Shown here: in pieces, positions 9 to 49,297 of the stretch
How positions within the stretch are numbered: position 1 is the stretch's first letter
Layout of the letters: the number at the start of each line of letters is the position of its first letter
Assembly (NCBI GenBank): GCA_044892525.1
Contig: CM097887.1
Span: 40,052,001-40,116,000 of the forward strand
Origin: Schmidtea polychroa
Taxonomy: Eukaryota
Length of the DNA stretch: 64,000 nt
Direction: 5' to 3'
Notes under the pieces: model-generated
Seen by the model: only the letters and a program-made list of their open reading frames with translations
Told to the model about the DNA's origin: nothing
Databases searched by the model: none
Program-made: the position numbers and the translations under genes

Positions 9-875
9 TTGAGAGTATGTGAGATATGCTGCAGAAGGAAGATAGTGCAGGAGAAGACAAAGGAACGATTGTTGCCGATAATAAGTTCAGAATTTTTAGA
101 ACAGTTGGTCATTGATATAGCACACATGAAGAATGGTGGAGTGTACAAGTATATGCTAGTTATCATTGATCGTTTTAGCAAAATGGTCAGTCTGACCGCA
201 CTGGAGAGACAAGACGAGAGATCGATTTTCAAAGCCATATTGGAGAAGTGGATAAACCATTTCGGAAAACCGCGAAGTTGTCTGTCAGACAGAGGGAAGA
301 ACTTCGATAGTGGTTTTATGAAAACAAATCTAGGAAGACTGGGTATTACGCAACAGTTCAGTTCACCAAATCAGCATCAATCTAACGGTTTAGTTGAGAG
401 AACAATACGGACAGTCAGAGACTTGCTGGCAACATCATTAGCAGGTGGACTAGGAGAGCGAAATTGGGCGGAGTTACTTCCTCGAGTAGAATTTTGTATC
501 AACGTGACACAACAGAGCGCGACGGGATTTTCTCCATTTGAAATTGTTTTTGGGAGGAAGATTAACCTTCATTCAACATTGCCTCAGACGACATTGGATA
601 CAGTTGAGATACATAGATTGGTAAAAGAGAACAGTGAGAAAGCAGCTAAACGAATGAAAGAGATGGAAACAGAGAAGAGAACGAATCGATGTTTCACGGT
701 GGGGGAGAAAGTATTAGTTCGGAAAGAACCACAAAATCGCGACAAAGATGGACTACAGTATGAAGGTCCTTTTGTCATATCAAAGTTTTTGTCAGAACGC
801 CAGGTGGAATTGAGTGACGGGACGACAAAGAAACTCAGACGAATTGAATGGCTTAAGAGATGGGCAGTTCCTTAA
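9..875 (+). CDS. Ty3/Gypsy pol C-terminus (integrase), 5'-truncated by the window edge
   Basis: CxxC end of the zinc finger (CEIC), D,D35E residues (VIDIAH, LSDRG, NGLVER), GPY/F motif (YEGPF), C-terminal RRIEWLK; TAA at 873-875 is followed at once by a PPT. Confidence 0.95.
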   Translation: MRVCEICCRRKIVQEKTKERLLPIISSEFLEQLVIDIAHMKNGGVYKYMLVIIDRFSKMVSLTALERQDERSIFKAILEKWINHFGKPRSCLSDRGKNFDSGFMKTNLGRLGITQQFSSPNQHQSNGLVERTIRTVRDLLATSLAGGLGERNWAELLPRVEFCINVTQQSATGFSPFEIVFGRKINLHSTLPQTTLDTVEIHRLVKENSEKAAKRMKEMETEKRTNRCFTVGEKVLVRKEPQNRDKDGLQYEGPFVISKFLSERQVELSDGTTKKLRRIEWLKRWAVP

Positions 876-1550: not shown

Positions 1551-3163
1551 CCGTGTTTTGCCGAATAAAAGTCATGACTTGTATTTATTTTTTTGCGTAA
1601 AATTGTTTAAAAATACAAAAAAGACTTGTATTGGGAGTAGTTTTTTTATTCAAAAATAGCCGTTTCGTCGTCCATATCATCTTCAATAATCTGACTGGAT
1701 GCACTGATATCCTGATTACGTAAATTATCAAGTGCAGCTCTGATTTTTTCGCCGTATATTTCATGATTGTAAATTAAAGTTTCACTAAAATTCTGATTGT
1801 ATAATAGATATGATGCGCGTAGCCCATTATTGATAATATTCGTATTAATTTTTCCCCAAGAATGCCGAATCCAACTCTCTACTTCAACCAAAGGCGGTTT
1901 TATGGCATTTCCCTTTGCATTTTCACCATCCTATGTTCAATATAATCGTTTATTTTATCTCTCAAATTCCAATTTAAACGGACTATTTACTGCCACATCC
2001 ATAAGTTGCAAATAACCAGTCATCCCCGACGGAATCATTACTTGATCAATGTTTCTGGTCTGCAAAAATGATTTCATCTGGGTAGCCCGATGCGTAGAGG
2101 CCGAATCCCAAATTAGCAAACCTCTTTTTTGTCCCCTAAGCACCAATGGGAAATTGATTTCAATCCATTTTTTGAGAATGTCCTGGGTGGACCATGCTTT
2201 CTCCGACTCCATTATATTCAAACCATTCGTAACTATAACAGTATCCTTTTTCCCCATAATAATGGCTGTGGGATATATCTTGGTTCCATTTAATCGTACA
2301 CCCAGTATACAAGTTAGCCGGCAACTTTCATAACCTGTGGATGGAACTCTTATTGATGAAGCTCCTCGCATTTCAATGGTTGTCTGCGAACTTTCACCAA
2401 AGAAAATGGCCGTTTCATCCATTGAAATACAAAATTCGGGATCATATTTTGATATATCCAAGCTAAGAATAAAAGCTTTATAAGACAGAGTACGCTCGAC
2501 TATATCATCATCGGACAGTTTGAATAGCGTCGTTGATCGTCTCAATGAGAGGTCATATCGTTTCATAAAGCCAGACAACCACTTCCCAGAGGCGGAGAAA
2601 CTCGATTCGGGATTACTAGAATTTTGTTGTGCCAATCTAAATGCATATTCTTGGATGTCAGAACGCTTTACGACTAAACTTCTAGATCTGCGCTCGATAA
2701 TCCAGTCAAATATGTGTTCCTCAATGTCAGAAATTACCAATTTTCTTCCTCCGCCTTGAGCTCTGGTCTGTCTCTCCGCATTCTTTAGCGATTGGAGATT
2801 CTCTTCCTCTGCTTTCCAACGACGAACAACTCGCAGATCAAGATTTACTTTTGCACAAAACTTTGCAAGGGTCATGCCGGATGTACGGGATTCACTGAGG
2901 ATTCTAAGCTTATAATCTATTGTATAAGCCTTTCTGGAACTCTTCTGTGCGTTCATGGGTTTAAAAATGTCTACTAAATGAATATTGAATCAACGACATT
3001 TAAAAATCATTATAAAAAACAATAATACAATAAAGTAAACGTATAAATGGTGTATGAATTAAAATAGGACTTGTAATAGGAGTAGGGCTTGTAATTATTT
3101 ATTTTTTAAAAAACGAACAATGGGCTTGTATTGGGAGTATGACTTTTATTAGGCAAAACACGG
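1551..3163 (-). mobile_element. pogo-family (DD35D, Passer/POGK-like) DNA transposon
   Basis: 25-bp TIRs CCGTGTTTTGCC(G/T)AATAAAAGTCAT with 1 mismatch, TA flanks on both sides, internal transposase ORF. Confidence 0.93.
1646..2956 (-). pseudogene. pogo transposase (about 436 aa; Brinker-like HTH, CENP-B HTH, DDE_1) broken by two compensating frameshifts
   Basis: Motifs SMDET, IWDSASTH and LQLMD give DD35D spacing. ORFs 1955-2956 and 1646-1891 are in the same frame; the segment between reads LRDKINDYIEHRMVK in a shifted frame. Confidence 0.9.
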
Positions 3164-11424: not shown

Positions 11425-12250
11425 CAGTAATAAAGGATCGTGTAACATTTTTACTATGCAGTAATGCTTCCGGAGATTGAATGCCTAAATCTCTGCTCGT
11501 AAACGAAAACCTCAGGCCAAGAGCACTATAAGGCAAGGATTTATTGAAATTACCTGTTCATTAATTTGCAAATAAAAAAGTGTGGGTAACTGCAGTTGTA
11601 TTCAAAAATTGGTTCGAGAAATGTTTGAAAAGGTATCTGAATGAAAAAAAACTAATCTATAAGGTATTATTAATTATTGATAATAGGCCTGGTCATCCAG
11701 TACTAAACCATCCCAACGTAAAGGTAATTTTTCTCCCACCTATTACCACATCAATCATACAACCATTGGACCAAGGAATTATATCGACATTCAAGTTATA
11801 CTACTTGAAAAAAACCTTTCAGTGCATTCTGGAAAAAATGGAGAATGACGATAAATTGGAATATAGCAATGCTTGGAAACAATTTTATATTATGGACTGT
11901 ATCACATACGCGACTTCAGCAATCCCACAGTTGAGAAGATCTACGTTAAACGCATGTTGGAAGCCATTATAGTCCGCTTGTGTTGTAACTGTAACAACAG
12001 ATAATATGAACAACTGCGTTCTGTGGGTGGGGAAGGGTTCGAAGATATGACGCGTAAAGATTTAGACAAGATCCTTCTCGACCAGATGCTATTTTCTCGC
12101 AAATGATCCGAATAGCGAGCGAGCACGAAAATTTCAACATGAACTAAGACTCTGTATGAAGAGCTACAAGGAACTGCATAAGGAATTATTGGGACTGGAA
12201 AGGAAATCAAATCAAAGATGCATTACAGAGTTTCTTGTGAAGTCAATAGA
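11425..12250 (+). pseudogene. Decayed Tigger/TIGD1-like transposase
   Basis: KDRVTFLLCSNASGD, NKKVWVT, LLIIDNRPGHP, FLPPITTSIIQPLDQGIISTFK, NACWKPL; several stops; no TIRs found. Confidence 0.85.
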
Positions 12251-13299: not shown

Positions 13300-16200
13300 T
13301 TATAATTCATTAACATAGTCCCTAGGAATCAAACCGACATTCCCATTTAATTCTCCTTCCCACCATATATCGTTTATTTTTCTTTTAATTGTAATCACAT
13401 CTCCTAAATAAAAAGTCCACATATATTCCAATAAAGTGCGATAGATAATAAAAAAATCACAATTTCCCACAAATTCAACTTAAATACTAATAAATAGGCT
13501 GACCAGGTACATTTTCAAGAAAATAAGGAACATTGTAAATTTTTTCATTAAAGCCGATTTAACCTGAACTTTAACGAATTTTTATAGAATTGTATGCAAA
13601 ATTTTGCTTATTTTAGTATTAAAAAAAAGTTTAATTTATAAATAGGGTGAACAGTAAAATTTGTAGAAAAAAATCTTTAATTGTATTAATTTTTATTTTT
13701 GGTACTTTTCTTCACTGATAACATTATTTAAAAATTTAGAGTTTTCTTTAAGTTAAAGAAAACTCTAAATTTTTAAATAATGTTATCAGTGAAGAAAAGT
13801 ACCAAATTTTTTTGGTAACTGAAATTGAAAAAAGTTACTACACTAACTACATTTTTTTAAAAACTGTGCTTTTCAGTGTTATATTGTAGTTCCTTCACGA
13901 ATAAGACTAAACTTTTACTTTTTGGACATAAAATAACAATTACTAATGTTAAAAGACTATTTTTAATGCTGAAAATAGAATTTTTAATTTTTATGAAAAT
14001 TTTTAATGAAGCTTTTATTTTCAAAATTGACTATAAAAAATTTAAAATTATTAACAACACATTAAAAGGCATATTTCAGTATAAAATATTTCAAATTGTG
14101 TAAGGAAATTCGAAAAATTGAAATAAAATTACTTTAAGTTAATAATTTTGTTGTAGTAACCTTTTACAATCTCAGTTACCAAAAAATTTAATTAGCTAAA
14201 ATTTGAATGAAAAACTTAGTAGGTATTTTTGATTTGCAACCCCCTCGGAAAATTGGCTTAAAGTGGAAGAAAAACTATAAAAATTCTAACATTTTTCCAA
14301 AAACTGGACAAATTTTTCCAAAAACTGGACACGGGACATTTGATGAAAATACAGGATTGTCCCTACTAATAAAAGACTTCATATATTCAATATTTTTACA
14401 AATATCAGGACAATTCTTAGCTATTTTATTGCACCGTCCGGTTTATAATAAGTTTTTGTGACAGATCATAAAATTAACCCAATTAACATACACTGACATA
14501 TTCATTTTTAGGACAATGTCCAAAAGACCAGAAAATATATTTTTAATTTAATATCGTTTGAATTTCATTTTTCGGTTCATATATGACAAAAACATATGTT
14601 TTGATTTTCTATTAAAAAAAATTTCCGAGTTATGTTTATTTTGGTGTTAACAACCTCAAGTGCCATTGCACCAAAAAGTGGTGCTAATATTTAAATTCTA
14701 AAAATAAGTAAAAAATATATTTTTATTTTCAGAATTTTTTCTCGTGATTAATTTTTTAAATGTTTTTTCTTTCAATTGTAGAATCATTTTTAAACAATTA
14801 ATTACACTTATTGATTTTTAAAAATTTCTAAAATGAAAAATATTATTTTGAACCCTTCAAAAATTGAGTCAGGTATACAAAAATTATATGTAACAAGTTC
14901 TAGTGGTTCTTTCAATGTTAGTGGTGATGACAAGGAGGATGAAGCAATAACACAAATAGCATTGGAAGAAGAGGAAACAGAAAAAGATGGAGATGAAAAT
15001 GCTAACATAACTTTGCTTTTTTAGATTAATGGGAGATTCAAAAGGATTTACCACCACCAATGACGCCAGTACAAACTTTGAGCCAGTTTATATATGATGA
15101 AGTCATCAAGCTACTCGTAGACCAAACAAAATTATATACCGAGCAGCAAAATCATCTTCGTCATCAAATTAGAATTATTAATTGGTCTCCAAATACAAAA
15201 GAAGAAATGAAAACAGATGAAAACTTTTATTGAAGTTGTATTATGAATGGGTTAAATGGGTTAAAAAAAAAGAGAAATATTGGAGCACGGTTTCATTGTT
15301 TGAAAATGCAATTTCAGATGCCAGCGATCCGATATGCTTCGTTTTGCAAACAATGAAGAAATCTGTGATATAGGTCACCATATGTTAAATGTCACCATTT
15401 CGACAGTAAATTTCCATCAAATACAGAATCAAATTATTTAAAATGAGCTCAGTAGATGGATATACGTACCACATTTTTATGTATTCTAGAAAGTCTGAGA
15501 ATGGCAAATGTGTAGTTGATCTCGTCATGGAAAAGTGTAAAACATTGATGAATAACTTACTTGATAAGAATAGGAAGTTATATGTGAATTAGCACATTCC
15601 TTTTTGAAGAGAAAACTTAATATAGTGGAGACAGTTGCCAAGAAGAACACGCCTGGGTGTATAATGGAAACCAAATAAAAAGAGGACAAATGATTTCCCA
15701 AGATGAAAAATGATATTACAATTCTAAAATGAAAGAATATGAGAGACGTAAAAATTCTTTCAATTAAAAATTTACCAATCATGGCAGAGGTACAATCTAA
15801 AAATATAAAAAGAATGATAGAAGATGATGATAATGAAATAGAAGACGGACTCGAGAGCCAATTAAAAGCATATGCACTATTGCTTATAACAAAGGTAAGA
15901 TAGGAATAGACCTTTCTGATCAGATGAATCAATATGCAACTAACCCCAGAAAGATACAGGTAGTTAGAATTGGGGTTAATTCTGGGAATGTCTGTAGTAA
16001 TCGCATATTTGATTTATCAGAAGGCAAATAAAAAATTGAAATGAGATTTCAAAATTATGATTACAAAACCAATTACCAAATGTGAAGATACTAGAAATTA
16101 TGCTACTCCTAAAAGTAAGCAAAATCACGCTTTGAAGACCCGTTAAATGGAGAAAGGCGAAGAAATGACTCGTTAGTAGAAATTTCACTATCTGAAAGAG

Positions 16201-18022
16201 GATCTGAAACCAAAGACATTTCTAGTTTTCCAAATGTCTTTGTCCTAAGGACAATGTTTACTTTCTACCGACGAACAAAATAATGTTCTTTGCATTGTAA
16301 AAGGGTTTGGATTTTTTATACCATTTTATAATTACTTTAGTAAAACAATAATTTCGTTTAAAAAATGAGAATAAATATTAGGTTTTAATAATAACAATAA
16401 TATATTATTTGCATTATTTCAGTGATTCCCAAACTTTAACATTTTCCCCTTCGAAATTATTTATTCGAAACCAAAATTTGCTGTTATTTACCTGTTACAT
16501 GGCTCCTATTCAAATTCTTATATTTATTTCATGTTATTGTAGGTGATTGCCCCGTTAAAAGTTACTTATTATAAATTAATTTGATATTTTGGGCTATTTA
16601 ATTATTTGAGCATTGCAGTGGTTAATATAAATTTCTAGATAATATTTTATAAATCATTGGTTGAAATATCGGCATTTATGAAAGTCTCTAACCTTCTTGA
16701 AATGACAATTCTTCTTGATCTCGGGCTTCAAAATCATGCAAAGCTTTACATTTTTCTCTGTTATCATTAACAATAGGTGGATTGGGTAATGGTGGGAGTG
16801 GCCGTTTAAATGATTGTTTATTACTACTGACACTAATTTGAGATTGTGGTCTAGTTTGAAATGAAACCGGTCTTTTAACAACTGGCGTTTCTTCTTCAGA
16901 ATCTGTGTCAAAATCATCAAAATCATCAATTGTGTTTTTTCCAGATGAAAAAACTTCGCTATTGCTAGAATTTGATCTGATCATTAAACCAGGTTCACAA
17001 GGTGAAAGTGTAGAGCCTGGCTTGCTTTCCAGTATTGATGTCAACATTGAATTACGATCAACAATGTTAATGATTTTCATTCCTAATGATATTAAAGGGT
17101 CAGGTGGAGCTGGTTTCGATTTCCAACTATGAAGAGCCAATAGTAATTTATAGATATTTGCACTGAGGAGATTCACGAGAGCTTGGGTCTTTAAAAATAT
17201 AATAAATATTATAATACTGGTACAAAAAATAATGATAAACACCGAAAAATACAAAAAACATAAAAAACCAATTTTGCATCGAAATCAAGTACATATATAA
17301 TAAAATTAACCACGTGTATCAAGTCCTTAATATGTATGCGATTTCTTATATTTATTTAATAAAGTTAAAGTACATCTACAACCAGTTTATGATACTTCGA
17401 CAATCGTCTGACTTTTGAATACTGGCAATATGAAAAGAATAATTGGGATCTTGAAATATGCTATATACAGAGTCAAATTACTTCCATGAATATATATATT
17501 TTCTTATCACCAGACGTGCTTAAGAATCCATGTTACTAATAGACAATTATCATCTGCGTCTAAGGGAAATAAATTGACGACAACTCGACCTGTTATAGGA
17601 TTAGACACAGGTATTTTTCATCAGTATTATTCATTACCAGTTAATATTTTTGTCTCTGGAGGCAAAAGAACTATCACATTCTACATGACTATCAATTAAT
17701 ATTTTTAAAGCCTTAGAAAGACTTAAACTATTTTCAGCCATATAAATTCAGAGAAAAAATATATATATTTCTAAAACTAAATAATAATTTTTACATAAGT
17801 GACCATTGTACTTAAACGAGTATGGGAAGAACTAATGGGTTTATTATTTAATATATTTAATATATTTAATACATTATTTAATATATCAAAATGTATTATA
17901 TTTCAAGTGAAAAAAATAAAAACGATGTTTCTGATCTAATTATACTAAAAAAATACTGTGAAAAATAAAACCACAGACAATAACATTAGACAATTGATCA
18001 TAACAAAAGTAGCATTTAACCA

Positions 18023-18103
<81 letters not shown>

Positions 18104-21100
18104 TCAACTGAATATGCATAAAATAAATATAGATCAAGTAGAATATCTTATTATTAAAAACATCCAATTTATGATAAATTTCAAAAAAGAATGTTTTATT
18201 AAAATCGTTTTGTATGCTAAAAAATTAACCAGAAAATAAATACAAATGTTAACAAAAAATCCAAAATATTTACCAATAATATGAAATAAATTTGTTTATT
18301 CGAATAAAAACAATAATTGAAACAATTTTCATAATTGTCATCATTCAATATACTGTTAAACTGCCAAGTCGAATTTCGGCAAACCCCCTTTTTAACATTA
18401 ACTAGGCTCATCCAAATTTTCAAAATTGGAATCGGGATAGCGTTACCAAACGTAGCGATTAATCGGGACAATTATAAAAATGCTTTTTTATGACTGAAAT
18501 AAAACTATGACCTATATTGAAATTAACTTTGTCAAACAATTTACGTTGCACAGTTCATATAGACATAAGATATTGTAATATTTCAGACATAAAAAGCAAT
18601 TTTTTAAACTGCCCCGATTAATCAGGACGCCTGGTAAAGCTAAATGTAAACAATTTTTTTATTTTTTATTTATACTTCAGTCTTTGTTCTTCCTTTCTTT
18701 ATAAATGGATATTCTGCAGTATACCTTTCCATATACTTACAAGTCTAACAACATTTATTTCAAATAATTAAAATAGATATGTGAACTCCAGTACAACATG
18801 AATATATATCATGAATATATACAAATTTTTATTTTTTTTGGTCGAATAAGAGTCTTTTTTTCAGATACCCCAATCCTATTTATATGTTTTTTTGTTTAAA
18901 TTGTTGATTACATAATTTCTGTTTGTTTTAATCGATTACGTCATATATTTATTTTATAAGAACTTTTGATACTTATATTCTTGAAATTAAATTCCCGTTG
19001 ATTATATCATCACCATTTTGAAATTTATTTTTAGTACGGTATTTTTGAATTTTCATAATTTCAATTTTGATCCGATTTTTAGCATTAAAATAATAAAAGA
19101 ACTTTAACAAATATTGATGATAAGGGCGGTTGGGTGGAGATAGCCATGAGTATGTAGTGGTATGGTTATGTTTCATGAAAAAGAAGAAATTATGTTGCTC
19201 CAAATATTTATGAACCGGATGAAGAACTTTTATATCATTCATATTTCCCGTAGAACGATGATGGATGTTCCATATTTTCTTGTTGATAATTCAAATCAAT
19301 CTAATGAAGATTATTACATAAAAACTTTTGTTTTGTTGTGTTGTAAATTTACAACTGTAAATTTTCAGTACGTATAACAAGAAACTATTTTGTGTTAAAA
19401 ATTTTATTTGTTATCATTGTTACTTGTTACATTGTTACACTGTTTTATTAAACCTTAAAAAATATTATTTTTGTTTGTCAATTTATAATTATTATGAAAT
19501 TCAGAAAAAGAAAGTACATCATTATATTATACTATATTTATAACCAATGAGAATTAAGAAAAAAAGAAATAAAAGAAAAATAGAAATGTATTTTCCGGAA
19601 GGAGATTGACAAGGACTATCTTATAGTCGAACATTTTTTCATTAAATAAATTATTCGCAGCAAAGGGCTTAAATTATCACTTTATTGTTTTTTTTATTAT
19701 TATTGGTGCAAAATTTTTTATTGCAAGAGTTGAATCAGCAATATTGTATACTTACCTGGCGCGATGAGAAATCTTCGCGTTTCCAACATAGTACTGATGA
19801 GAGCCAAAAGCTCGAAACTAGTCTACTATTGGGATTTGCACTGGGTATCACAAAGCTTGTGCTGTTTATTTTATTAAAATTAATAATTTCAATAACCTAA
19901 AATCTTCGTTTATGTAACTTAGATATATTTAATGTGTATCAAAAATCAATATTATATCATAAATATAACATAAAATGCTTAAATTAGAATCAAACTTTTA
20001 ATATAACTGAAACAATATTAAGATTGCAATATATGTAAAAATTTTTAACTCTAAGGTGATGTTACTTTTCAAAAATAAATATATTATAGTAAATGCGCGT
20101 TTTGAATATTTTTTAATATAGTCTGCTATATTAAGTAAGTTGCTTGACTATAACTAATGAATTTCATTTTTTAAAGATGAAGGGTGAGTTAAATAACGAG
20201 TGATGTTTTAAAGCCAATAAAGTCATTTGACGCAAATTAAATAATAATAATAATAAATTTCATTAAACTGGATCGTGATGTTATTTTAAAACTTATTGAT
20301 TATATGCACTATAATTTCTTTTCAGAATACTAACTTATTTAAATGTGATATGCATTATTTAATAGATAACATTAAAATAATAGTAATATATCGTTACTTT
20401 TTATTATTATTGTAAATTATAAAACAAAATCAAATAAAAATTCGATGGAAATTAAAAATAGAAAAGAAATTTCGAGAAATAATAACCTTAAAAATAAAAA
20501 TGACAAAAATCTGTGAAAAAAGAAATTGAATTCAAAAATCATCAACTGGATCCAGACAAAAAGATCCTGGAGCTTTAGAAATCGAATTTGAGGATCACCA
20601 ACCATATTGATACAAACCGAATCGAGAGATCATAGAACTACAGGAATCGAATTAGCAATTTATAAAAATCAAAATATTCGAGGGAAGAAAATTAGCGAAG
20701 ACAAAGAGACAATTCCATTTATGAGCCGAGGTATAAGGACTTTTGTTTTTTTATCTTGAATAAAAGTTGTAAAATATATGTTCTATGTTTGATATTGTAT
20801 AGTAATTCAAAATATACACGCACCCCAACAATCCCAAAACAATTTTAACGGTGACTCTGTTGGGCTCTACAATTCTCTATAAAATACAAATCCCCATCCA
20901 TATATAGTAGGAATAGACTTCAATATAATAATATTTACTTTGCTCAATTCTCTTATAGTCTTTTTTCTTGTAGCATCATCTGAAAATTTCGATGTGTCTT
21001 CATACACATTGAGCATCTTAATCGCACCTAAAATCAATGTTACACTAAATTTATATATATAAATATGCAAATAGCAAATTAAAAGATAAACAGGAATCCC

Positions 21101-22800: not shown

Positions 22801-22883
<83 letters not shown>

Positions 22884-25800: not shown

Positions 25801-28800
25801 GTCAATGTTATCATCAAAATTAAATAATTTATCCTATCACTTTTTTAGTCGTTTATGGTTAGTGCTACAGAAATTACAACATTATATAACAGCAAACCAA
25901 TACATCCTTTACACAATAGTAAAAAATTTGATAAAAAATAAACTTTCACGCTTTAATAGAAAATTGTTGGGTATTGAAAAAGTGCACTAATATAAGAAAA
26001 CAAAAATGATCTGACTTAATTACAGAATATTGCGCTTATTAATCATTCAAGTGTTATCACTATTATATATGAGATATTTTCGAGTTTTTAGGACCGACTT
26101 GTTGGATAAAAAGCTCGTGGTTACACTATTGAACACAAATATTACTTTCATGATTTTAAAATATTGGCACTAAAAAGCACTGTGTTGAAAGGTTGTATGT
26201 AGATAGATAATGAAGTCCTGCTCCATGAGCACCCTCCTTTGGGGCAACAAATGTCAATGCGCGGTTTGGGCAGTGGATTACTAGGTTAGGTCAATGTGAN
26301 NNNNNNNNNNNNNNNNNNNNNNNNNNNNNNNNNNNNNNNNNNNNNNNNNNNNNNNNNNNNNNNNNNNNNNNNNNNNNNNNNNNNNNNNNNNNNNNNNNNN
26401 NNNNNNNNNNNNNNNNNNNNNNNNNNNNNNNNNNNNNNNNNNNNNNGCTTAACACCCTTGCCATAGAAGTAAAAGAAGCGCCATTTTTGTACTGTCTATA
26501 TTCTCATAAATAGAAATACCAGTGAATTTGATTTGTATATCTAAGAGATTAAGACATCATGTATAAACTGATCTATATGAAATTCTAAATAAAAATAACG
26601 GGGATTTCAGTCATAAACAAATGAAAATAATATGTTATAAATGTCATGAGAACATAGGAATTGAAAAAATATTCTTTTCATTATAAAATCATCTCATTAT
26701 AATCCCTACAACACAAAACACTTTATTAAAAAAAAGAAGCAAATAATAAAATATTATAATGTTTATATTATATTTATTTCATCGACTTTCATGCTAAATA
26801 TTACAATACAACTTTTCGTGATTTAATTGCAGCAAATTTGGCAATTAAATCATTTATATCTAATTCATTCATTAGATCCCTTTCAATGGACATCAGTGAA
26901 AGAGACCATTCAACCCATTTTGTGTCATACATGTTCTTAAATTATTTTTGATTATTTTAAGTTTCCAAAAGTTTCTTTCTGCACTTACTATAGAAACTGG
27001 TATGGACAAAATAATTCTTAAAACTATAAATAAATTTTTTAAACAATTTTTTTTAATTTTTATCGCATATAAATTCAAGTAACTTTCGAGGTTTCAAATC
27101 AGAATTAAATATTGAATTAAATATTGAATAATATATTGAATAATATATTGAATAATATATTGAATAATATATTGAATAATATAATAAATAATATAATGAA
27201 TAATATAATGAATAATATAATAAATAATATAATGAATAATATAATGAATAATATAATGAATAATATAATGAATAATATATTGAATAATATATTGAATAAT
27301 ATATTGAATAATATATTGAATAATATATTGAATAATATATTGAATAATATAGTGAATAATATATTGAATAATATATTGAATAATGTATTGAAGCGAATAG
27401 TGTATTGAATTGATTTTGTAATGATAATAAATAATTAATAAAAAATTTTAGAAAGCAAAAAAATAAAAATCCGTAAAATACAATACAAATAAATTTAAAA
27501 AAATTATTATATAACAATTTTATTTGAATATATATATAAATATATATAAGCACTATCTATTGGGAAATTCAAAATTGTTAGTGTAAATTTTTATAAAATA
27601 AATTTTTCTCTCATACTTAGACTGATATAAGTCTGAATTAATTGTTAAACAATTTTCCCACATCCAGAAGTTATAGTGGACAAAACACGGTTAAAGAAAT
27701 GTCTACTATGATAACTATACAATCTATTTATGTTTTGTTTCTTTATAAAACTAGTATATTCAAATTATTAATTTACATATACTTCAGAAGTTTAACCATT
27801 TGCGAATAAACTAATAAATCAGATTTGATAAACCTTGTCTAAGATTATCTTGTTTCTTCTGATCTTGATACAGAGCAGAGATCCGCTTTTCAAGATTTTC
27901 AATACGTCGATTCAAATCCATGGGATTCTCCTTACTTTCTGCGTACAAAGTTAACAGGTTTTGTTCAGTTTTATAAACAACTGGCGATTGGTTAGTAAAA
28001 TGTATTGAATTTTCCATTAAGTCTTCATTAATATTTGACTTTTGTATATCAATCTATTGTTAAAATAAAAACGAAACATAGCGAAGCGATAATATACTTT
28101 AATTTTCGATGTTATATTACTGTATAAAGCCGGAGTTTCATTAATATATTTTTCATATGATTCAATAACCGTTTTTAAATTGTTCAAGCGATCAGTCTCA
28201 AATTTCTGTAACTGATCTAATCCCTAGAAGAAAACATTTTTTTCAAAAAAAATTCAAATTCATCGGTTCAGTGAAAAGGACGAATAAAAATAATCAATTA
28301 CAGGCACACAAAAATAGATTATCTGAAAGTTAAATAGGCTAGAATTTTTCCAAAAACAAGTTTTACTTACAAGGAGATATATATTTATGTTTAACAGGCT
28401 TTGAACTTTGGATCCAAATGTGAAAATATTCGGATTCTACATACAAAAATTACACAGGTTTAGTTTGTTAGCTTATAAAAATCCTTCATCTAATACTTAT
28501 TATACATTATTATAGGCGTTAATGAGTGGCTTTTTTTGTTTAAATACTTGTAGTCCAAACTTACTTTAAAAAATGTTTTATAACAAAACATTTGCAATCG
28601 CAGCACATTGATTTTACTAATAAAATATTGTAGTTTAATTTCCGAAATAATTAAGACATCATGAAAATATAATTTTGATAATTTTTAATGGTGCAATTTT
28701 ATGTTAGTTGGAAACGATATTTATTTTCTTAAAATCTTAAATGTAGATCTAATTAGCCAATATGTAAGCCTCAAGAAATAAAAAATCAAATATATTTTTA

Positions 28801-31800
28801 CTAAACCAATTGCAAATGTTATGTCAAAAACATTTTCAAAAGTAAGTTTGAACTAAAAGTATTTAAACAAAAAGCCACATACTAATGGCTATAATTTAAT
28901 AAGCATTAAATGGAAGTTCTTCTTTCGTTAGTAGACCAAGCCTAAATAATTTTGTAGTATATTGTCACCTTTGAGTCTAAAACTCAAAGCCTGTTGTAAC
29001 ATAANNNNNNNNNNNNNNNNNNNNNNNNNNNNNNNNNNNNNNNNNNNNNNNNNNNNNNNNNNNNNNNNNNNNNNNNNNNNNNNNNNNNNNNNNNNNNNNN
29101 NNNNNNNNNNNNNNNNNNNNNNNNNNNNNNNNNNNNNNNNNNNNNNNNNNNNNNNNNNNNNNNGAAATGTAATATAAATAAATAGTAAAACGTCGACATT
29201 ACATATAAATAACTTTGTTCCCAATTATGCCGACTTTCTTCAGCGGATAAGGATGACTCAAAATACTCTTTTTCTGCCTTCATACTCATATCTTTCAATT
29301 TCTGTGTACACTTTTCGATCTAGAAAGGATTTGATCAAAAATTCTGTAAACATCTATAAAAGATAAACAATGAAATTGTATTCAACAAAAATTCAGAAAT
29401 GTGAAATGCCACCAACCTGATTGATCATCACTTGAACTGGACTAAAAATAACAATCAACACAAATCAATATTAAACCGACATAACAATTACAGGGACGTT
29501 AAAATCATCGATTTTATGAAATAATTCATTATTTTCAATGAAAATTCAATATTTCATTAAGCAAATCAATCAATGGCAGCAAATCAATTTAGACTGCCAT
29601 CAAAATATGGATATAATTGTGGAACAATCCATATTAATAATGCAATTTACTGTGCTAATCAATTTCTAAATCAGATGCATTCCAAAGATTTACAATATTT
29701 TTGGTATTAACCTACGTTAACTGATTATTTAATTTAGAAGTTCTTAAATCTTACAAATACTTCGTTATCTTTTAATTTAATAAATTTTTCAACCTATGTC
29801 ATATTAGACCCTTTAACATTCCAGTCCTTTACTTTAGTTAAGTGGTTCTTAACATCTTTAGTGATTGAGATCCTCTTGAATCAAAAAATAAGATCTCATA
29901 CCGCTTTCAAAATTGTTTTCATATTATTTTATTTTTAAGAAATTATTTCCATTTAACATTTTTAATAAAAAACACAAATAAATTTACAAATACAAAAAAA
30001 GTAATTTTTAAATTTTTAATGCTACTTTGTTGTTGTTTATTCGTAATAATATTTTTGACGCGAGGCTCCTTTTTTGAAAGGGTCGCGTAAATCATCATTT
30101 TCATTTAAGTGATTTCTGTTAAATGTTTTTATGAGCAAAAGTGGTGGAAATCCCATTTCATAATAAACCTATATCCCAAAATTTTGACTTTTGGAAACAG
30201 TGAAATATATCTATGCTAATAAAAACTTCATTTAACCTCTGTCTGACTTAATGAATAATTAAATTTCTAATACTATATAATAGCATAATAAATCTTTGAA
30301 ACATGCCGAATTTTTGAATATCAATAATAGACATATTTTAACATTATAGGAAAAATAAAATAAAAAACAATTTACCTTGCCACGAATTTATAAAATTTTG
30401 TGCCATGACAGACTACAACAATAAAAATTAAATCCAAAAACTCATGTCATTCACAATATAATGCTTTAAAATCTTTTTTATAATTCATCCTGGTTTTTGT
30501 CTCTAACAAGTAATTTAGCTAATTTGTTATTCTTAACTTATTCTGATACGAGAAACAAATTTCAATGAACCATTTGCACTCACCGTTAAATCATCTATCT
30601 GTTACTTTTTTGTATTATTTTTATTTAATATTTACTTAACAATAAATATTTAAGAAATTGGATAAGCCGATACGAAACAATTGTATTACACTATAAAAGC
30701 CTGACACCTCTAAAAAAACTTACATGAATTCGGCCAGATTTCAAAATTCCACTCACATTCCGATCAAAAATCTTAAATTTCATAAAAAAGTGTATGAAAA
30801 CTTATATAAATTTCCAATGTTTGCAAAATATAAAGAACCCAAGTTTATTTATTAAACATCGATACATATACTGATTCATAGTCTAAGCTTTTTAATAAAT
30901 ACAATGGAAAAGAAATCAATGGTGAAATTTGAAAAAAAAAGTTCTTATAAACTAATTTTAGTATCAATTTAAGCAATGAATCAATTTTTAACACTGGGAA
31001 AACATTTTAATTAAATAAATTAAATGGCTAAATTTATTTTAATTGTTAAGCGCATTCATCATCTCAAATTTAGAGATAACTTAAAAGTTTTCTAAATTAA
31101 TTTTCTGTCTAAAATTATTTTGTGAAGACTTAATTTTGCTTTAGTTTGAAAATATTTTCTAGTAATTGAAAGTGATCCCAAATGAGCTTTCAAATTCCGA
31201 TCGATGTTGAAGTGTATTTATCTCTAACTATCGGAAACTGTAAAATAAATTAGGAAGTTATCATCACAAAGCCTGAACATGGATTTCATTCTCAAAAAAG
31301 CAAAATCAGAATATATGAAAACAAAATTAACACTAATTCTATTCAAAATATTTTTACAATTGACTTCACAAAGTTTCAAATCTCTCAATAAACTCGATGT
31401 ATAACCTTTATTCTGCGATTTTCAATATTTATTGAAAGTATGAAATGTATTTAATGCACAATAAAAAAACTAAGTAAATATTTTATTACACAAAAGAATA
31501 TTAAAGCAAGTTAAACAAAACGATCAGATGGTCATCGACAACGATTTCGATCCAGAAATAAATTCTCAAAATTGAAATATTTTCATTGCAAAACAGACAA
31601 CACTCATGGAAAATATTGTCTTTAAAAACTGTTCAAAAATCTCGTACAAATGAAAGAATATATTATTATATCTCTGAAATTCGTATTTTTATGGCATTTG
31701 AAGAAATGTCATTTTAAAGGTAAAATTATCACTCTCACTTTTAAGAGATATATTATTTTTGGTCTCGAATATTTGCTTCCGTGTCAAATAGCCCCAAATG

Positions 31801-37800: not shown

Positions 37801-39556
37801 TGCTGCTCAACACGACTATACTTGCTATGTATAATATATGTTTGCTGCTCTACACGACTTTATTTACTTTTATTTACAAGTTCGAACTTGCACAATATAT
37901 GATGATATATGATGAACAATTACTGACACATAACCTCAGTTGTGTCTAGCATTCTGAAAGAGGCGTATCGAATAACTTATAATGTTATAATATATTATTA
38001 TAAATATATTACATCGTAAGTATTTATTTGTAATATTATTAACAAATATAAATAATTTATTAAAATTTTTTATAAGATGGCAAAAAAATATCTTACTGAT
38101 ACTGAAATGGAGGAAATATTAATGCAGTCTGATAGTGAAGAGGAATTTCTCGATGAAGTATCGTCAGAAGAAGACAGCAACGATGATGAGGCAACCAATG
38201 ATTCTGATAATTCATATGATTATACTGAAGAGCCTAAACCCAAGAAAAGAGCTCAGATCAATAACGAATATAAATGGAAGGACGGAACATCTTTTACACC
38301 AAAAATTCACAATTTTAATAACGAACATTCAGGTCCTACAGTAGGTAACGCTGGTTCCACGGAATTAGAGTGTTTCACAATATTTTTTACCGAGGATATA
38401 GTGAAAAAAATTGCTGAGGAAACTAACTCATACTTTCAATTTGTTATGACTTAAAATTCAAACAAAGATAAATCGCGTCTCAAACGGTGGAAGAACACAG
38501 ATTCCAAAGAACTATATTGCTTTTTTGCTATAAATATTTTAATGGCTCAGGTGAAAAAAACCGTTTGAATGATTATTGGTCTCAAGAGTGGCTTCGATCA
38601 ACTCCAGTATTTGACAAATATTTGCTACTTTTGCAGCTACTTCATTTTAACGATAATACTTCACCGCCCATTGAGGGTGATTCTTTACGGAAAATAAAAT
38701 TTATTGTTCAGCACTTGAAAAAATCATTCAGGGAGGCTTTCATACCATTTCAAAATATTTGTATGCTATTCAAGGGACGCTTGTGCTTCAAACAATACAT
38801 TCCTTCCAAGCGCCATCGTTTTGGAATTAAATTGTTCATTATGTGTGATTGCCAAACGGGTTACGTTTTAGACATACGTTTTAATTATGTTCCTGTTTAA
38901 AGAATTGAAGTAAACCTTCAATGTCACAGCAATAACAGTTTTTTTTTCCATTTAAAAGAATGAAATGACATTTTGTGAATATTTAGTGCGTTTTTGCAGA
39001 ACCTTATTTATTTTATATATTTTCTTTGAATAATAATGATGTCAATTATATGCCAGCGCAAATGGTTAACATATGATTTTACAAAATCGTTTTTTTTATC
39101 AAATAACTATACTATGTATTTAAAATTAAATTTTTAGACTGAATTCGGAATAAATAGACCCGAAATCAAACTGTAATTTAAATAAAGAACTTGACGATGT
39201 ATTTCAAGTAATTCATCTGTGCTCAATAGCACCAAATTATGCGGTAACTCATTCATAATATTCTATAAAAAAAAAGTTGCAGGCGCATGGAATTAGTATC
39301 AATGATAAAAATAAATTAATCAAATTTAAATGAAATATATATATATATATATATCATGTAACAAACTTATGAATTTCAGATTCCCCAATCATATTATGTC
39401 CAGTGTTTGTCCAAAGAGTACAAATAGACCTTCAAAAAAGTTTCATTATAAAAATAATTCAGTTTTTGTTACTACCCTTTACTAGGTTGAAATGCCTTTA
39501 TAATTCGAGTGCCGATTTTTGACAATTTTGTTGCATATTCTATTTCTAATTCATAT
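13300..39556 (-). CDS. NOSTRIN: NOSTRIN-like F-BAR + HR1 + SH3 protein, spliced, 5' end unresolved
   Basis: GT-AG exons with consistent phases: 39556-39476 (YELEIEYATKLSKIG), 39429-39363, 39262-39191, 35953-35774 (VETEIEK...DKERSK), 29319-29203 (AEESRHNWEQ), 28223-28098, 28053-27834, 21027-20939 (KMLNVYEDTSKFSD), 17188-16693 (LVNLLSANIYKL...KALHDFEARDQEELSFQEG), 13403-13300 (DVITI...WWEGELNGNVGLIPRDYV*). From memory these segments parallel human NOSTRIN (e.g. LDLLEANSYKL, MLKTYSSTSSFSD). The three 5'-most exons are less certain (weak donors). Confidence 0.82.
13698..13806. repeat. Perfect 109-bp palindrome (54-bp arms, 1-nt loop at 13752)
   Basis: TTTGGTACTTTTC...CTTTAA G TTAAAG...GAAAAGTACCAAA, checked base by base. 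Confidence 0.95.
13807..14189. mobile_element. MITE-like element with about 37-bp imperfect TIRs (TTTTTTGGTAACTGA...)
   Basis: Left arm TTTTTTGGTAACTGAAATTGAAAAAAGTTACTAC versus reverse complement of right arm TTTTTTGGTAACTGAGATTGTAAAAGGTTACTAC; no clear TSD. Confidence 0.6.
14830..16300 (+). pseudogene. Heavily decayed piggyBac (PGBD4-like) transposase
   Basis: Acidic N-terminus, then TPVQTLSQFIYDEVIKLLVDQTKLY, DKNRKLYV, ITILK*KNMRDVKILS, YNKGKIGIDLSDQM; many disablements. Confidence 0.75.
18023..18103. repeat. (ATT)n microsatellite; similar (AAT)n tracts at 22801-22882 and about 48998-49088
   Basis: Visible trinucleotide runs. Confidence 0.95.
18438..18642. mobile_element. Small decayed hAT-like MITE
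   Basis: Imperfect 33-bp TIRs TAGCGTTACCAAACGTAGCGATTAATCGGGACA / TAGCTTTACCAGGCGTCCTGATTAATCGGGGCA; no TSD seen. Confidence 0.55.
19781..19834 (+). ncRNA. Minimal type I hammerhead ribozyme, predicted cleavage GUC after 19823
   Basis: Core CUGAUGA (19794-19800); stem II GAGC/GCUC with loop CAAAA; GAAA (19814-19817); 2-bp helix III inside the palindrome ACUAGU (19817-19822); stem I UAGUA/UACUA, CA bulge, CCAA/UUGG. Confidence 0.9.
21116..21645. mobile_element. Non-autonomous foldback element with about 175-bp diverged TIRs (MULE-like?)
   Basis: Arms about 21116-21292 and 21472-21645 (GGTACTTTC...GACAAAGTATTTTGACCCC...); TSD not resolved. Confidence 0.75.
23596..24096. mobile_element. hAT (Charlie/Buster-type) MITE, 501 bp
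   Basis: 14-bp perfect TIR CAGTGATTCCCAAA and perfect 8-bp TSD CACTAAGA. Confidence 0.95.
26300..26446. other. Assembly gap; further gaps at 29005-29163, 48848-48988 and 55793-55955
   Basis: Runs of N. Confidence 1.
27103..27392. repeat. 12-bp minisatellite (ATATTGAATAAT / ATAATGAATAAT), about 24 copies
   Basis: Visible period-12 array; explains the YSIY and NNIL low-complexity ORFs. Confidence 0.95.
34078..34167 (-). pseudogene. Penelope-like GIY-YIG fragment
   Basis: YAYIGETFRLLCT*LLEHCRPMGLGNISDH matches YIGxTxRxLxxRxxEH and resembles the 8.7-9.0 kb copies. Confidence 0.6.
34168..34870 (-). pseudogene. Tc1/IS630-like transposase N-terminal HTH fragment interrupted by a MITE
   Basis: After removing 34435-34802 the frame reads KHSVRDIAS...SEMTSKAAEKTGVVLSQPTMVRKLK*LNIT*KRLTLVP. 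Confidence 0.5.
34435..34802. mobile_element. hAT MITE, 368 bp
   Basis: TIRs CAGTGATTCTCA / CAGTGGTTCTCA and perfect 8-bp TSD CCCTAACC. Confidence 0.92.
37709..39065 (+). mobile_element. Internally deleted piggyBac element with PGBD4-like transposase remnants (38077-about 38880)
   Basis: TTAA on both sides; ends CCCTTTCGCTG / CCATTTGCGCTG; motifs FFTEDIVKKIAEETN and FKGRLCFKQYIPSKRHRFGIKLFIMCD; the first catalytic Asp segment (IDES) is missing. Confidence 0.85.
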
Positions 39557-48278: not shown

Positions 48279-48995
48279 TTCTACATTATCAACATGTTAG
48301 TTAAAACAAGTTGAACTAAAATGGTTAAATTAAAATCATTTAATGTTTTGGGTTAAAGTTAACTGAAACCACGACATGTTATAGTTTACTAATCAGAAAC
48401 GCCAACAGAATTATTGGGCTAGATTGGGCTAGAGTGATTTATTTTTAAGAGTTTCTTTTTTTATTTTTTCCGAGATACCAGTATTGCGTTTCTTTACTGT
48501 CTTATCTAGCCTAGTTTGTTTAAATATCACAGGGGAAAAATTACACGGCAATTAATTATTATCTTTGGAATCAGATAATTTATGTGTTCCATTTTAGGGG
48601 AAAGTGAAGAGTAATTTACATTTTAAACAATTTCCTATCAAAATGAAAATTTACAAGGAAAATGAGGGTCTTAGTTAATATTAATTAAATAGTAGTAATT
48701 GTGTAAATCGTTCGATATCGACAGCGTTAAGTATTTACATATCAGACTAAAAATGCATAGATATAAATTCCAACTTTACAAAAACTAGTTTGCAGTTACC
48801 CTACTTCACCTTTAGTTAAATTTTAAAATTTTAAATGTTAAAAGATANNNNNNNNNNNNNNNNNNNNNNNNNNNNNNNNNNNNNNNNNNNNNNNNNNNNN
48901 NNNNNNNNNNNNNNNNNNNNNNNNNNNNNNNNNNNNNNNNNNNNNNNNNNNNNNNNNNNNNNNNNNNNNNNNNNNNNNNNNNNNNNNNTAGTGTT

Positions 48996-49089
<94 letters not shown>

Positions 49090-49297
49090 ATGCTAAAGTT
49101 ATTATAGGTAATATTAGGATATAAATCTGAAGGATAAAAACTAATTCTTATACGAAAGTTATATGATCTCTTAAGTATTTAACTATTTTTATAGTATAAA
49201 TTATTTTTTGTTACTTTTCTTTATTTTCAATAATTCATACCATCAAAATATTTTCAAGACTTAATTTATTAATTAAAATAAATAATTTCCTAGTTTA

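What the first reader, a model, noticed from the sequence alone, without database searches (positions are those of the whole stretch)
19781..19834. Intact minimal type I hammerhead ribozyme with self-complementary helix III in a host intron
Seen: every catalytic-core nucleotide is present (C3-A9 CUGAUGA, G12-A14, A15.1-U16.1, GUC triplet), stem II is a perfect 4 bp, and stem I has 9-11 bp with a 2-nt bulge. Helix III is only 2 bp but lies in the palindrome ACUAGU. Known: such minimal hammerheads occur in Penelope-like elements and metazoan retrozymes, and are thought to cleave as dimers through the palindromic helix III. Here it appears solitary in the window, antisense to NOSTRIN, with no adjacent recognisable RT or partner ribozyme. 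Inference: the marker of an uncharacterised ribozyme-bearing retroelement or circRNA family, or a domesticated cleavage site in an antisense transcript.
Basis: partly seen in the sequence, partly recalled or inferred. Interest (0 to 1): 0.85.

Follow-up and report, generated by a model that had tools for sequence, protein, structure and literature searches.

The report
Solitary hammerhead ribozyme in exon-like island
A complete, textbook type I hammerhead ribozyme motif really is there, most likely an orphan copy of a known kind of ribozyme-bearing repeat sitting backwards inside a host gene; the odd part is that its opposite strand carries a perfect splice-donor signal and looks like a small exon.

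Summary
The motif is real. On the + strand, 19781-19834 holds every hammerhead core nucleotide. Helix I is 6 bp + AC bulge + 5 bp, helix II is a perfect 4 bp, and helix III is tiny, inside the palindrome ACUAGU. Cleavage is predicted after C19823. Rfam matches Hammerhead_1 end to end at 27.4 bits, below the curated cut-off of 34. My descriptor found it once in the window and never in 116 Mb of composition-matched random sequence. It has the "canonical" metazoan type I design of retrozymes and PLE repeats, not the PLE "minimal" variant. The window holds no second copy, tandem unit, target duplication or PLE-like RT.

On the host-gene strand this island is bounded by AG and by CAG|GTAAGTAT, the full 11-nt complement of the U1 5' end and the only such 11-mer in 64 kb. 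"In an intron" is therefore uncertain: the island may be a cryptic or recruited exon.

Best reading: an orphan monomer of a known kind of hammerhead repeat, antisense in a host gene and probably near-inactive alone. The NOSTRIN identity of the host gene was not verifiable. Interest is modest.

The parts
19781..19834 (+). Type I hammerhead ribozyme motif. Helix I is 5 bp + AC bulge + 6 bp; CUGAUGA 19794-19800; helix II 19801-04/19810-13 with loop CAAAA; GAAA 19814-17; helix III inside the palindrome ACUAGU 19817-22. Predicted cleavage after C19823.
   Evidence: Sequence. Rfam Hammerhead_1 27.4 bits over the full model; HH9 23.6 bits. Descriptor scans.
19748..19758 (+). ATACTTACCTG, identical to the 11-nt 5' end of U1 snRNA. 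On the minus strand it reads CAG|GTAAGTAT, the fully complementary 5' splice site (GT = 19755-19754).
   Evidence: the only perfect match in the window, where about 0.04 is expected from composition. The U1 11-mer and the consensus 5'ss are as printed in PMC3033335, PMC4856993 and PMC12527174.
19759..19780 (+). Predicted hairpin (6-bp GC-rich stem, inner 2 bp, GAAA loop). It fills the space between the 11-mer and helix I exactly.
   Evidence: MFE and centroid fold. The fold as a whole is not better than shuffles (z -1.2).
19756..19861 (-). Exon-like GC-rich island of 106 nt on the host-gene strand. AG at 19863-19862 precedes it and GT at 19755-19754 follows it. One frame is open throughout (35 codons). 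It contains the whole hammerhead in antisense.
   Evidence: 80-nt GC peak 0.46 against 0.24 for the surrounding 2 kb. In one search the donor ranks 1 of 537 GT sites and the acceptor 207 of 406 AG sites in the 10.7 kb between the flanking exons, by my own rough weight matrices.
27834..28053 (-). Upstream host-gene coding exon (coiled-coil-like). The 3' boundary is approximate because every candidate donor is weak.
   Evidence: ORF piece, sequence, site scores.
16693..17190 (-). Downstream host-gene exon: Ser/Pro-rich linker and the first 19-21 residues of an SH3 domain. The 5' boundary is uncertain (candidate AGs at 17190, 17164, 17128). The donor is at 16692.
   Evidence: Pfam SH3_1 matches residues 180-198 of the piece.
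13303..13403 (-). Last coding exon of the host gene, holding the rest of the SH3 domain. It joins the previous exon in frame.
   Evidence: PDB phmmer hits to many SH3 domains, best E 2.9e-10.

Best explanation
This is a genuine hammerhead, descended from one rather than arisen by chance. It has the canonical metazoan type I design and is present as a single orphan (monomer) copy of a ribozyme-bearing repeat of the retrozyme / Penelope-like-element kind. It lies in reverse orientation inside a host gene.

Mechanism, inferred from the family. If the + strand is transcribed, helices I and II fold around the CUGAUGA...GAAA core and the chain is cut after C19823. Helix III is too short to form within one molecule. 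Efficient cleavage therefore needs two copies pairing through ACUAGU, and this locus has only one copy. I therefore expect it to be weak or inactive on its own and to have no role for the host as a ribozyme.

On the host-gene strand the same DNA offers a perfect U1-binding 5' splice site behind a weak acceptor. The island may therefore behave as a cryptic exon or a decoy splice site in the host pre-mRNA.

Shown: the motif, its rarity by chance, its solitude, its strand, and the splice-site-like signals. Inferred: descent from a mobile repeat, low monomer activity, and any splicing.
For: - Motif quality: complete core and all 17 helix pairs; full-length Rfam Hammerhead_1 alignment.
- Rarity by chance: 0 strict hits in 116 Mb of matched random sequence, and only this hit in the window even with a relaxed descriptor.
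- Architecture: it equals the 'canonical' metazoan type I hammerhead described in PMC4209133 (helix I 6 bp, helix II 4 bp, helix III 1-2 bp with a 2-4 nt palindromic loop).
- The same helix III recurs in nature. A pattern fixing only the core and GAAACUAGUC found 16 metagenome loci. In 12 distinct ones the two unconstrained helix II pairs are formed in 12/12 with compensatory changes. Covariation is 0.516 against 0.157 for shuffles, and 83% of cells are paired against 28-42% when partners are slid.
- Context of those loci: some lie on the same strand just up- or downstream of RT ORFs (L002, L007, L013), and one contig carries two copies 727 nt apart (L005).
- Helix III energetics: closing it within one molecule costs +5.7 kcal/mol, while the palindrome self-duplex gives -6.2 kcal/mol. 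This fits the dimer model cited in PMC4209133.
- Precedent: solo monomers of hammerhead repeats are known and evenly dispersed, and about 43% overlap introns in Xenopus.
Against: - No second copy, tandem unit, target-site duplication, A-tail or PLE-type RT is in the window. The only RTs present are LTR-type.
- No relative of the flanks was found in metagenome, viral or prokaryote collections. Descent from a repeat family is therefore inferred from the motif alone.
- The source genome could not be searched.
- The score is below both Rfam gathering thresholds.
- The perfect 11-nt splice-donor/U1 motif 23 nt away has about a 7e-5 chance within +/-60 nt (my arithmetic, noticed post hoc). A plain orphan-repeat model does not explain it.
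- None of the other same-type hammerhead loci has that motif (7-9 of 11 matches at best).
Confidence: 0.6

Rival explanations
1. Recruited or cryptic exon. The island, whatever its origin, is spliced into host-gene transcripts as a 106-nt exon. The perfect donor is then there because it is used, and the hammerhead on the other strand is a passenger.
For: - The GC-rich block ends exactly at an AG and at CAG|GTAAGTAT.
- The donor ranks first of 537 GT sites in the interval.
- One frame is open through all 35 codons.
- The island lies between coding exons of a minus-strand gene.
- In that open frame the island needs 2 nt from upstream and ends on a codon boundary. This can be joined in frame to one candidate acceptor of the next exon (reading).
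- Retrozyme copies overlapping exons are reported but rare, 0.24-0.32%.
Against: - The acceptor is poor: an A-rich tract, rank 207 of 406. Confirmed acceptors in this window are T-rich.
- With the most plausible donor of the upstream exon (phase 1) the island is read in a frame with an early stop. The in-frame route needs the weakest donor and a weak acceptor.
- The peptide has no Pfam match.
- The gene model cannot be closed, because an N run (26300-26446) lies between the flanking exons.
Confidence: 0.2
2. An ordinary, old host coding exon in which a hammerhead-like string has arisen by chance on the antisense strand.
For: The exon-like features are the same as above. No repeat family could be shown. 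The first stage may have screened very many windows, so rare chance motifs can surface.
Against: - The chance rate is about 1e-10 per position at exon-like composition. That is of order 1e-8 for a 106-nt exon even before counting the 5 extra helix I pairs (my arithmetic).
- There were 0 hits in 116 Mb simulated.
- The motif matches natural design choices that chance does not require: the 6/4 bp helices, a G-C first pair of helix II, and the palindromic ACUAGU seen in 16 independent natural loci.
- The acceptor is weak and the reading frames fit awkwardly.
Confidence: 0.08
3. An independent small RNA gene on the + strand. The transcript would start at A19748 with the U1 5' end sequence, followed by a hairpin and a hammerhead fold, and would end near the T-runs after 19866. 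It would be a U1-mimicking or self-processing small RNA.
For: - The first 11 nt of the block equal the U1 5' end exactly.
- The 11-mer, the hairpin and the hammerhead abut with no spacer.
- T-rich sequence follows the block.
Against: - No Rfam U1 or other snRNA match appears even at E 10 in 131-301 nt searches.
- No tRNA-like gene is present.
- Internal Pol III box-like strings match the textbook consensus poorly (3 mismatches of 9 each, by eye).
- The folds are not better than shuffles (z about -1).
- No relatives were found.
- The 11-mer is equally well read as a splice donor on the other strand.
Confidence: 0.04
4. Part of a currently active retrozyme or Penelope-like element.
For: The ribozyme is intact. 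PLE repeats and retrozymes carry type I hammerheads.
Against: - There is no tandem partner, although activity is thought to need two ribozymes.
- There is no pLTR pair.
- There is no PLE-like RT: tblastn with RT ORFs that neighbour same-type hammerheads gives nothing below E 0.6.
- Neighbouring ORFs have no Pfam match.
Confidence: 0.03

Closest known systems
Canonical type I hammerheads of metazoan non-LTR retrozymes (Cervera and de la Pena 2020, PMC7229834), including their solo monomers (bioRxiv 10.64898/2026.07.22.740005)
   Same: Type I topology; helix I 6 bp then an interruption; helix II 4 bp; helix III 1-2 bp with a short palindromic loop; low-GC surroundings. Dispersed monomers, often intronic, are described.
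   Different: No tandem repeat of 150-450 bp and no recognisable unit boundaries. No related copy could be retrieved. The adjacent perfect U1-type 11-mer is not a described feature.
Hammerheads in the pseudo-LTRs of Penelope-like elements (Cervera and de la Pena 2014, PMC4209133; Craig et al. 2021, PMC8557442)
   Same: A ribozyme associated with a retroelement; single scattered motifs from truncated copies are common; the dimer model through helix III applies. Metagenome loci with the very same GAAACUAGUC lie next to RT ORFs in the same orientation.
   Different: Metazoan PLE 'min-HHRs' have helix II of 7-8 bp, helix I of 4-5 bp and no helix III; this one does not. There is no RT or GIY-YIG ORF and no repeat pair in the window.
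Rfam Hammerhead_1 (RF00163) and the intronic amniote ribozyme Hammerhead_HH9 (RF02275)
   Same: The best Rfam matches. The alignment runs the full length of the model with all core positions and no non-standard pairs.
   Different: Scores of 27.4 and 23.6 bits are below the curated cut-offs of 34 and 52. From my own knowledge, HH9 lies in the sense strand of its host intron and has a longer helix III. This one is antisense and has a 2-bp helix III.
Consensus 5' splice site / U1 snRNA 5' end
   Same: An 11 of 11 match (CAG|GTAAGTAT on the minus strand; AUACUUACCUG on the plus strand).
   Different: Nothing beyond the 11-mer resembles U1 (no Rfam U1 match). Use as a splice site is untested.

Membership tests
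Hammerhead ribozyme, type I | Conserved core: C3-A9 (CUGAUGA), G12-A14, A15.1-U16.1, and a cleavable H17 | tested here: met
   All present at 19794-19800, 19814-19817, 19822 and C19823.
Hammerhead ribozyme, type I | Three helices around the core, with helix I open (5' and 3' ends) | tested here: met
   Helix I is 6+5 bp and helix II is 4 bp. Helix III is only A-U and C-G around a 2-nt loop, which cannot close within one molecule (+5.7 kcal/mol).
Hammerhead ribozyme, type I | Score at or above Rfam's curated gathering threshold | tested here: not met
   RF00163 scores 27.4 against 34; RF02275 scores 23.6 against 52. The alignment shows no gaps at model positions in helix I, the core or the helix II stem and no non-standard pair; the only places the sequence departs from the consensus are the two collapsed loop regions (loop 2 and the helix III loop). 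That the shortfall comes from the minimal helix III is my inference, because cmscan gives no per-position scores.
Hammerhead ribozyme, type I | Self-cleavage at the predicted site | not testable with these tools
   No transcript or end-mapping data are available.
Metazoan non-LTR retrozyme | Canonical type I hammerhead (6 bp / 4 bp / short palindromic helix III) | tested here: met
Metazoan non-LTR retrozyme | Head-to-tail tandem repeats of about 150-450 bp, each with a hammerhead | tested here: not met
   TRF, repeat finder, blastn and local alignment of the flanks found none. At most this is a solo monomer.
Metazoan non-LTR retrozyme | Other genomic copies of the same unit; expression as linear and circular RNA | not testable with these tools
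   The source genome and its transcriptome were not searchable. No relatives were found in metagenome, viral or prokaryote collections.
Penelope-like element | ORF with a PLE-type RT (and usually a GIY-YIG endonuclease) flanked by direct pseudo-LTRs carrying the ribozyme | tested here: not met
   No such ORF or remnant in the window. The only RTs are LTR-type with RNase H and integrase. There is no second ribozyme.
Penelope-like element | min-HHR architecture of metazoan PLEs (helix II 7-8 bp, helix I 4-5 bp, no helix III) | tested here: not met
   Helix II is 4 bp, helix I is 6+5 bp, and helix III is present though minimal.
U1 snRNA | 5'-terminal AUACUUACCUG | tested here: met
   19748-19758 on the + strand, 11/11.
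U1 snRNA | Overall sequence and structure (four stem-loops, Sm site) as modelled by Rfam RF00003 | tested here: not met
   No U1 match at E up to 10 in 131-nt and 301-nt searches.
Internal coding exon of the host gene | Functional 3' and 5' splice sites | tested here: inconclusive
   The donor is perfect and ranks 1 of 537. The acceptor is weak, ranking 207 of 406 by a rough matrix, with an A-rich tract.
Internal coding exon of the host gene | Reading frame continuous with the neighbouring exons; conserved peptide | tested here: inconclusive
   The frame is continuous only through the weakest candidate sites of the neighbours. The alternative phase meets an early stop. An N run between the exons prevents closing the model. 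No orthologue could be obtained.
   The SH3 domain is confirmed. No FCH/F-BAR match was found in the candidate exons tested. A whole-library protein search with the largest exon gave 0 hits.

The most novel reading that the evidence does not exclude
The block 19748-19866 is one selected unit in which a hammerhead and a full U1-recognition element are deliberately juxtaposed. There are two possible forms. It could be a + strand small RNA that presents the U1 5' sequence and processes itself. Or it could be a ribozyme-derived exon whose inclusion in the host mRNA and whose antisense self-cleaving transcript regulate each other.
Probability: 0.06. Interest if true: 0.7.

Novelty: new member of a known kind. 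Interest (0 to 1): 0.3.

Why it matters
As a ribozyme this adds one more orphan type I hammerhead to the many thousands known in animal genomes, so on its own it changes little.

What could matter is the juxtaposition. A structured, GC-rich ribozyme module dropped backwards into an AT-rich intron brings with it, or has acquired, the strongest possible U1 binding site. If the island is spliced, it would be a concrete case of a ribozyme-bearing repeat giving rise to an exon or a poison exon, a route that is reported as rare for retrozymes. If other copies of the family carry the same 11-mer, that would be a new, unexplained feature of these repeats.

Tried and rejected
- Rfam at gathering level: nothing.
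- A second or partner ribozyme anywhere in 64 kb, including CYGANGA cores and helix-III-less forms: none.
- Tandem or degenerate neighbouring unit, target duplication, terminal repeats: none. A 23-nt, 74% direct repeat 131 nt away (D3) did not hold up in local alignment against shuffles.
- A long-range rod-like fold of 321 nt is not better than shuffles (z -0.9).
- U1 snRNA, other snRNA or spliced-leader RNA gene: no Rfam support. An Sm-like AAUUUUG downstream of the donor on the minus strand is unremarkable in 24% GC DNA.
- tRNA-derived SINE head: ARAGORN found nothing, and the A/B-box-like strings are poor. One pattern call failed on syntax and was not pursued.
- Relatives of the locus: the metagenome pattern scan gave 16 hammerheads with the same helix III but unrelated flanks. 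Viral and prokaryote scans gave nothing. The ribozyme's letters are not in the paper library or the two supplements searched.
- Host-gene orthologues to settle the exon question: the single whole-library protein search, run with the largest exon, gave 0 hits.
- Exact-protein look-ups of window ORFs found no record, and one was not sent.
- A search with the intact hAT-like ORF gave at best 68% identity, so the source species is not in the protein collection and stays unidentified.
- The length rule of the word-indexed search makes single exons useless as queries.
The only U1 letters used are the 11-mer printed in the cited papers.
Full report
**1.

On the + strand the stretch 19781-19834 reads as a complete type I hammerhead:
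- Helix I is made of 19781-19785 with 19830-19834 (5 bp, one G.U), a two-base bulge (A19786, C19787), and 19788-19793 with 19824-19829 (6 Watson-Crick pairs).
- CUGAUGA occupies 19794-19800.
- Helix II is GAGC/GCUC (19801-04 with 19810-13) closed by CAAAA.
- GAAA occupies 19814-17.
- Helix III is only A-U and C-G around UA, so that 19817-19822 is the palindrome ACUAGU.
- The cleavage-site residue is C19823.

At Rfam's curated thresholds nothing in the window is called. In sensitive mode the only ribozyme match in 64 kb is this site:
- Hammerhead_HH9 scores 23.6 bits (cut-off 52), with E 1e-3 in 301 nt and 0.2 for the whole window.
- Hammerhead_1 scores 27.4 bits (cut-off 34), with E 2e-5 to 4e-5 locally. 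It aligns over the whole model with every core position and no non-standard pair.

**2. It is more than chance**

- A strict descriptor (exact core, helix I of 5 bp or more, helix II of 4 bp or more, helix III of 2 bp or more, short loops) finds this one site in the window. It finds none in 116 Mb of first-order-Markov sequence with the window's composition. A relaxed version found 3 in that 116 Mb.
- On the real window an even looser descriptor (CYGANGA core, 3-bp helices, helix III optional) still returns only this site on either strand.
- My arithmetic from the base composition gives about 3e-10 per position. That is about 4e-5 per window and of order one per gigabase genome for the bare descriptor. 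It is lower still once the five extra helix I pairs are counted.

**3. Which hammerhead it is**

Cervera and de la Pena (PMC4209133) define the "canonical" metazoan type I hammerhead. Helix I is 6 bp, helix II is 4 bp, and helix III is 1-2 bp capped by a 2-4 nt palindromic loop. It is unable to cleave well alone and active as a dimer through an extended helix III. The "min-HHR" of metazoan PLEs differs: helix II is 7-8 bp, helix I is 4-5 bp, and there is no helix III.

Nearest-neighbour energies agree with the dimer idea. Closing helix III within one molecule costs +5.7 kcal/mol, while the palindrome paired with itself gives -6.2 kcal/mol.

The exact helix III is a recurrent natural choice:
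- A pattern fixing only the core and GAAACUAGUC found 16 metagenome loci.
- In the 12 distinct ones, the two helix II pairs left free by the pattern are formed in 12 of 12 with compensatory changes.
- The whole structure has 83% of cells paired, against 28-42% when partners are slid. The covariation score of 0.516 was reached by 0 of 500 shuffles.
- Some of these loci lie on the same strand just up- or downstream of RT ORFs (L002, L007, L013; RVT_1 only, so PLE identity is not shown).
- One contig has two copies 727 nt apart (L005).

**4. The surroundings**

The copy is solitary:
- The 30-mer has no match at up to 3 mismatches.
- The flanks have no similarity elsewhere in the window beyond microsatellites.
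- There are no tandem repeats, target duplications or degenerate neighbouring units.
- Nearby ORFs have no Pfam match.
- tblastn with the RT ORFs that neighbour same-type hammerheads finds nothing.
- The window's only RTs are LTR-type with RNase H and integrase, 40 kb away.

A gene runs on the minus strand across the site. Coiled-coil-like ORF pieces lie at 35986-35756 and 28053-27834. An exon ending at 16693 carries the first third of an SH3 domain, and the rest of that domain is at 13403-13303. The two SH3 exons join in frame.

I could not verify that this gene is NOSTRIN. No FCH/F-BAR match was obtained. The one whole-library protein search returned nothing. The source species is evidently absent from the protein collection, since the best hit to an intact transposase ORF is 68%.

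**5.

The hammerhead sits in a 106-nt GC-rich island (19756-19861). Its 80-nt GC peak is 0.46, in a region averaging 0.24. Read on the gene's strand, the island is preceded by AG (19863-62) and followed by CAG|GTAAGTAT.

That 11-mer is the full complement of the U1 snRNA 5' end. Equivalently, the + strand reads AUACUUACCUG at 19748-19758, the U1 5' end itself (PMC3033335, PMC4856993, PMC12527174). It is the only perfect copy in the window, where about 0.04 is expected, and it lies 23 nt from helix I. The gap between them is filled exactly by a predicted hairpin.

Further points on the exon question:
- By a rough weight matrix of my own, this donor ranks first of 537 GT sites between the flanking exons. 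The acceptor ranks 207 of 406 and has an A-rich tract, unlike the T-rich acceptors of confirmed junctions.
- One minus-strand frame is open through the island.
- Phase analysis is inconclusive. With the likeliest donor of the upstream exon the island is read in a frame that soon meets a stop. The open frame connects only through the weakest candidate sites.
- An N run (26300-26446) lies between the exons, so the model cannot be closed. I did not try to fill it.
- None of the other same-type hammerhead loci has the 11-mer; they show 7-9 of 11 matches, which is background.
- Rfam gives no U1, snRNA or other match for the block, and ARAGORN finds no tRNA-like gene.

**6. Weighing the explanations**

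- A chance hammerhead inside a real old exon needs an event of order 1e-8 per exon. It also does not explain why the string follows natural design choices. I give it about 0.08.
- A genuine hammerhead from a ribozyme-bearing repeat, present as a solo monomer in antisense orientation, is the ordinary expectation. Such monomers are dispersed, and about 43% overlap introns in Xenopus (bioRxiv 10.64898/2026.07.22.740005). This model leaves the perfect donor as a coincidence of about 7e-5 (noticed post hoc), unless the island has been recruited as an exon or the family itself carries the motif.
- I therefore commit to the orphan-monomer reading at 0.6. In this reading the ribozyme is probably near-inactive alone, and its complement acts at most as a cryptic exon or decoy donor.
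- As a distinct rival, the island may really be spliced into host mRNA (0.2).
- Small probabilities remain for a U1-mimicking small RNA (0.04) or an active element (0.03).

**7. Novelty and score**

Novelty: a new member of a known kind. Interest: 0.3. The ribozyme itself is ordinary. The exon-like island with a perfect U1 site is a curiosity worth one look in the source genome and transcriptome.

The consensus line printed by the alignment tool was not used.

Noticed in passing
L001 (match 753-781, minus), L008 (1053-1081, minus), L015 (482-510): Metagenome contigs of about 1.2 kb. Each carries a type-I-like hammerhead with the same GAAACUAGUC next to an ORF matching the satellite tobacco necrosis virus coat protein family (Pfam TNV_CP, E 1e-24 to 1e-27). 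They look like small satellite-virus-like replicons with a ribozyme.
   Followed up: partly
L002, L010, L013 (one family, RT ORFs 88-96% identical) and L007: The same-type hammerhead lies 200-700 nt up- or downstream of long RT ORFs on the same strand, the layout described for Penelope-like elements. Pfam and NCBIfam show only a generic RT domain and no GIY-YIG, so the element class is not established.
   Followed up: partly
L005:319-348 and 1046-1075: Two identical hammerheads 727 nt apart with near-identical flanks on a 1.3-kb marine contig. This is a tandem unit of retrozyme type, larger than the usual 150-450 bp.
   Followed up: no
window 26300-26446, 29005-29163, 48848-48988, 55793-55955: Four N runs of 141-163 nt. 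The one at 29005-29163 interrupts a minus-strand ORF (28984-29298) that reads like host-gene coding sequence. The one at 26300-26446 lies between the two host exons that flank the ribozyme, so the gene model cannot be closed. They were left as they are.
   Followed up: no
window 45826-47685 (-): An intact 619-aa hAT-type transposase ORF (GTF2IRD2/ZBED5-like domains). The best database relatives are only 60-68% identical, and named hits come from beetles, a bryozoan and fishes. The spread across phyla suggests a widely exchanged transposon. It also shows that the source species is missing from the protein collection.
   Followed up: partly
window 9-875 (+), 61301-63957 (-), 1955-2956 (-), 11580-11972 (+), 38077-38900 (+): Other mobile-element coding remnants: LTR-type pol (RT, RNase H, integrase) at both ends of the window, a Tc5/pogo-like transposase, a DDE_1 fragment and a piggyBac-like transposase fragment.
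   Followed up: partly
window 52181-55556 (-): ORF pieces that by eye read like a urocanate hydratase gene, with short (about 50 nt) introns using GTATGT...TTTTAG. No domain or homology search was run on these pieces; only an exact-sequence look-up, which found nothing. I used one of its junctions only to see what real splice sites look like in this genome.
   Followed up: no
window 13698-13806 and 56096-56157: AT-rich perfect palindromes that score as plant or nematode miRNA precursor families on both strands (48.8 and 42.9 bits, below cut-offs). They are probably just inverted repeats or MITE-like hairpins.
   Followed up: no
window 18023-18103, 22801-22883, 49000-49090: Long perfect (ATT)n/(ATA)n microsatellites of about 27 units, scattered through the host-gene introns.
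   Followed up: no
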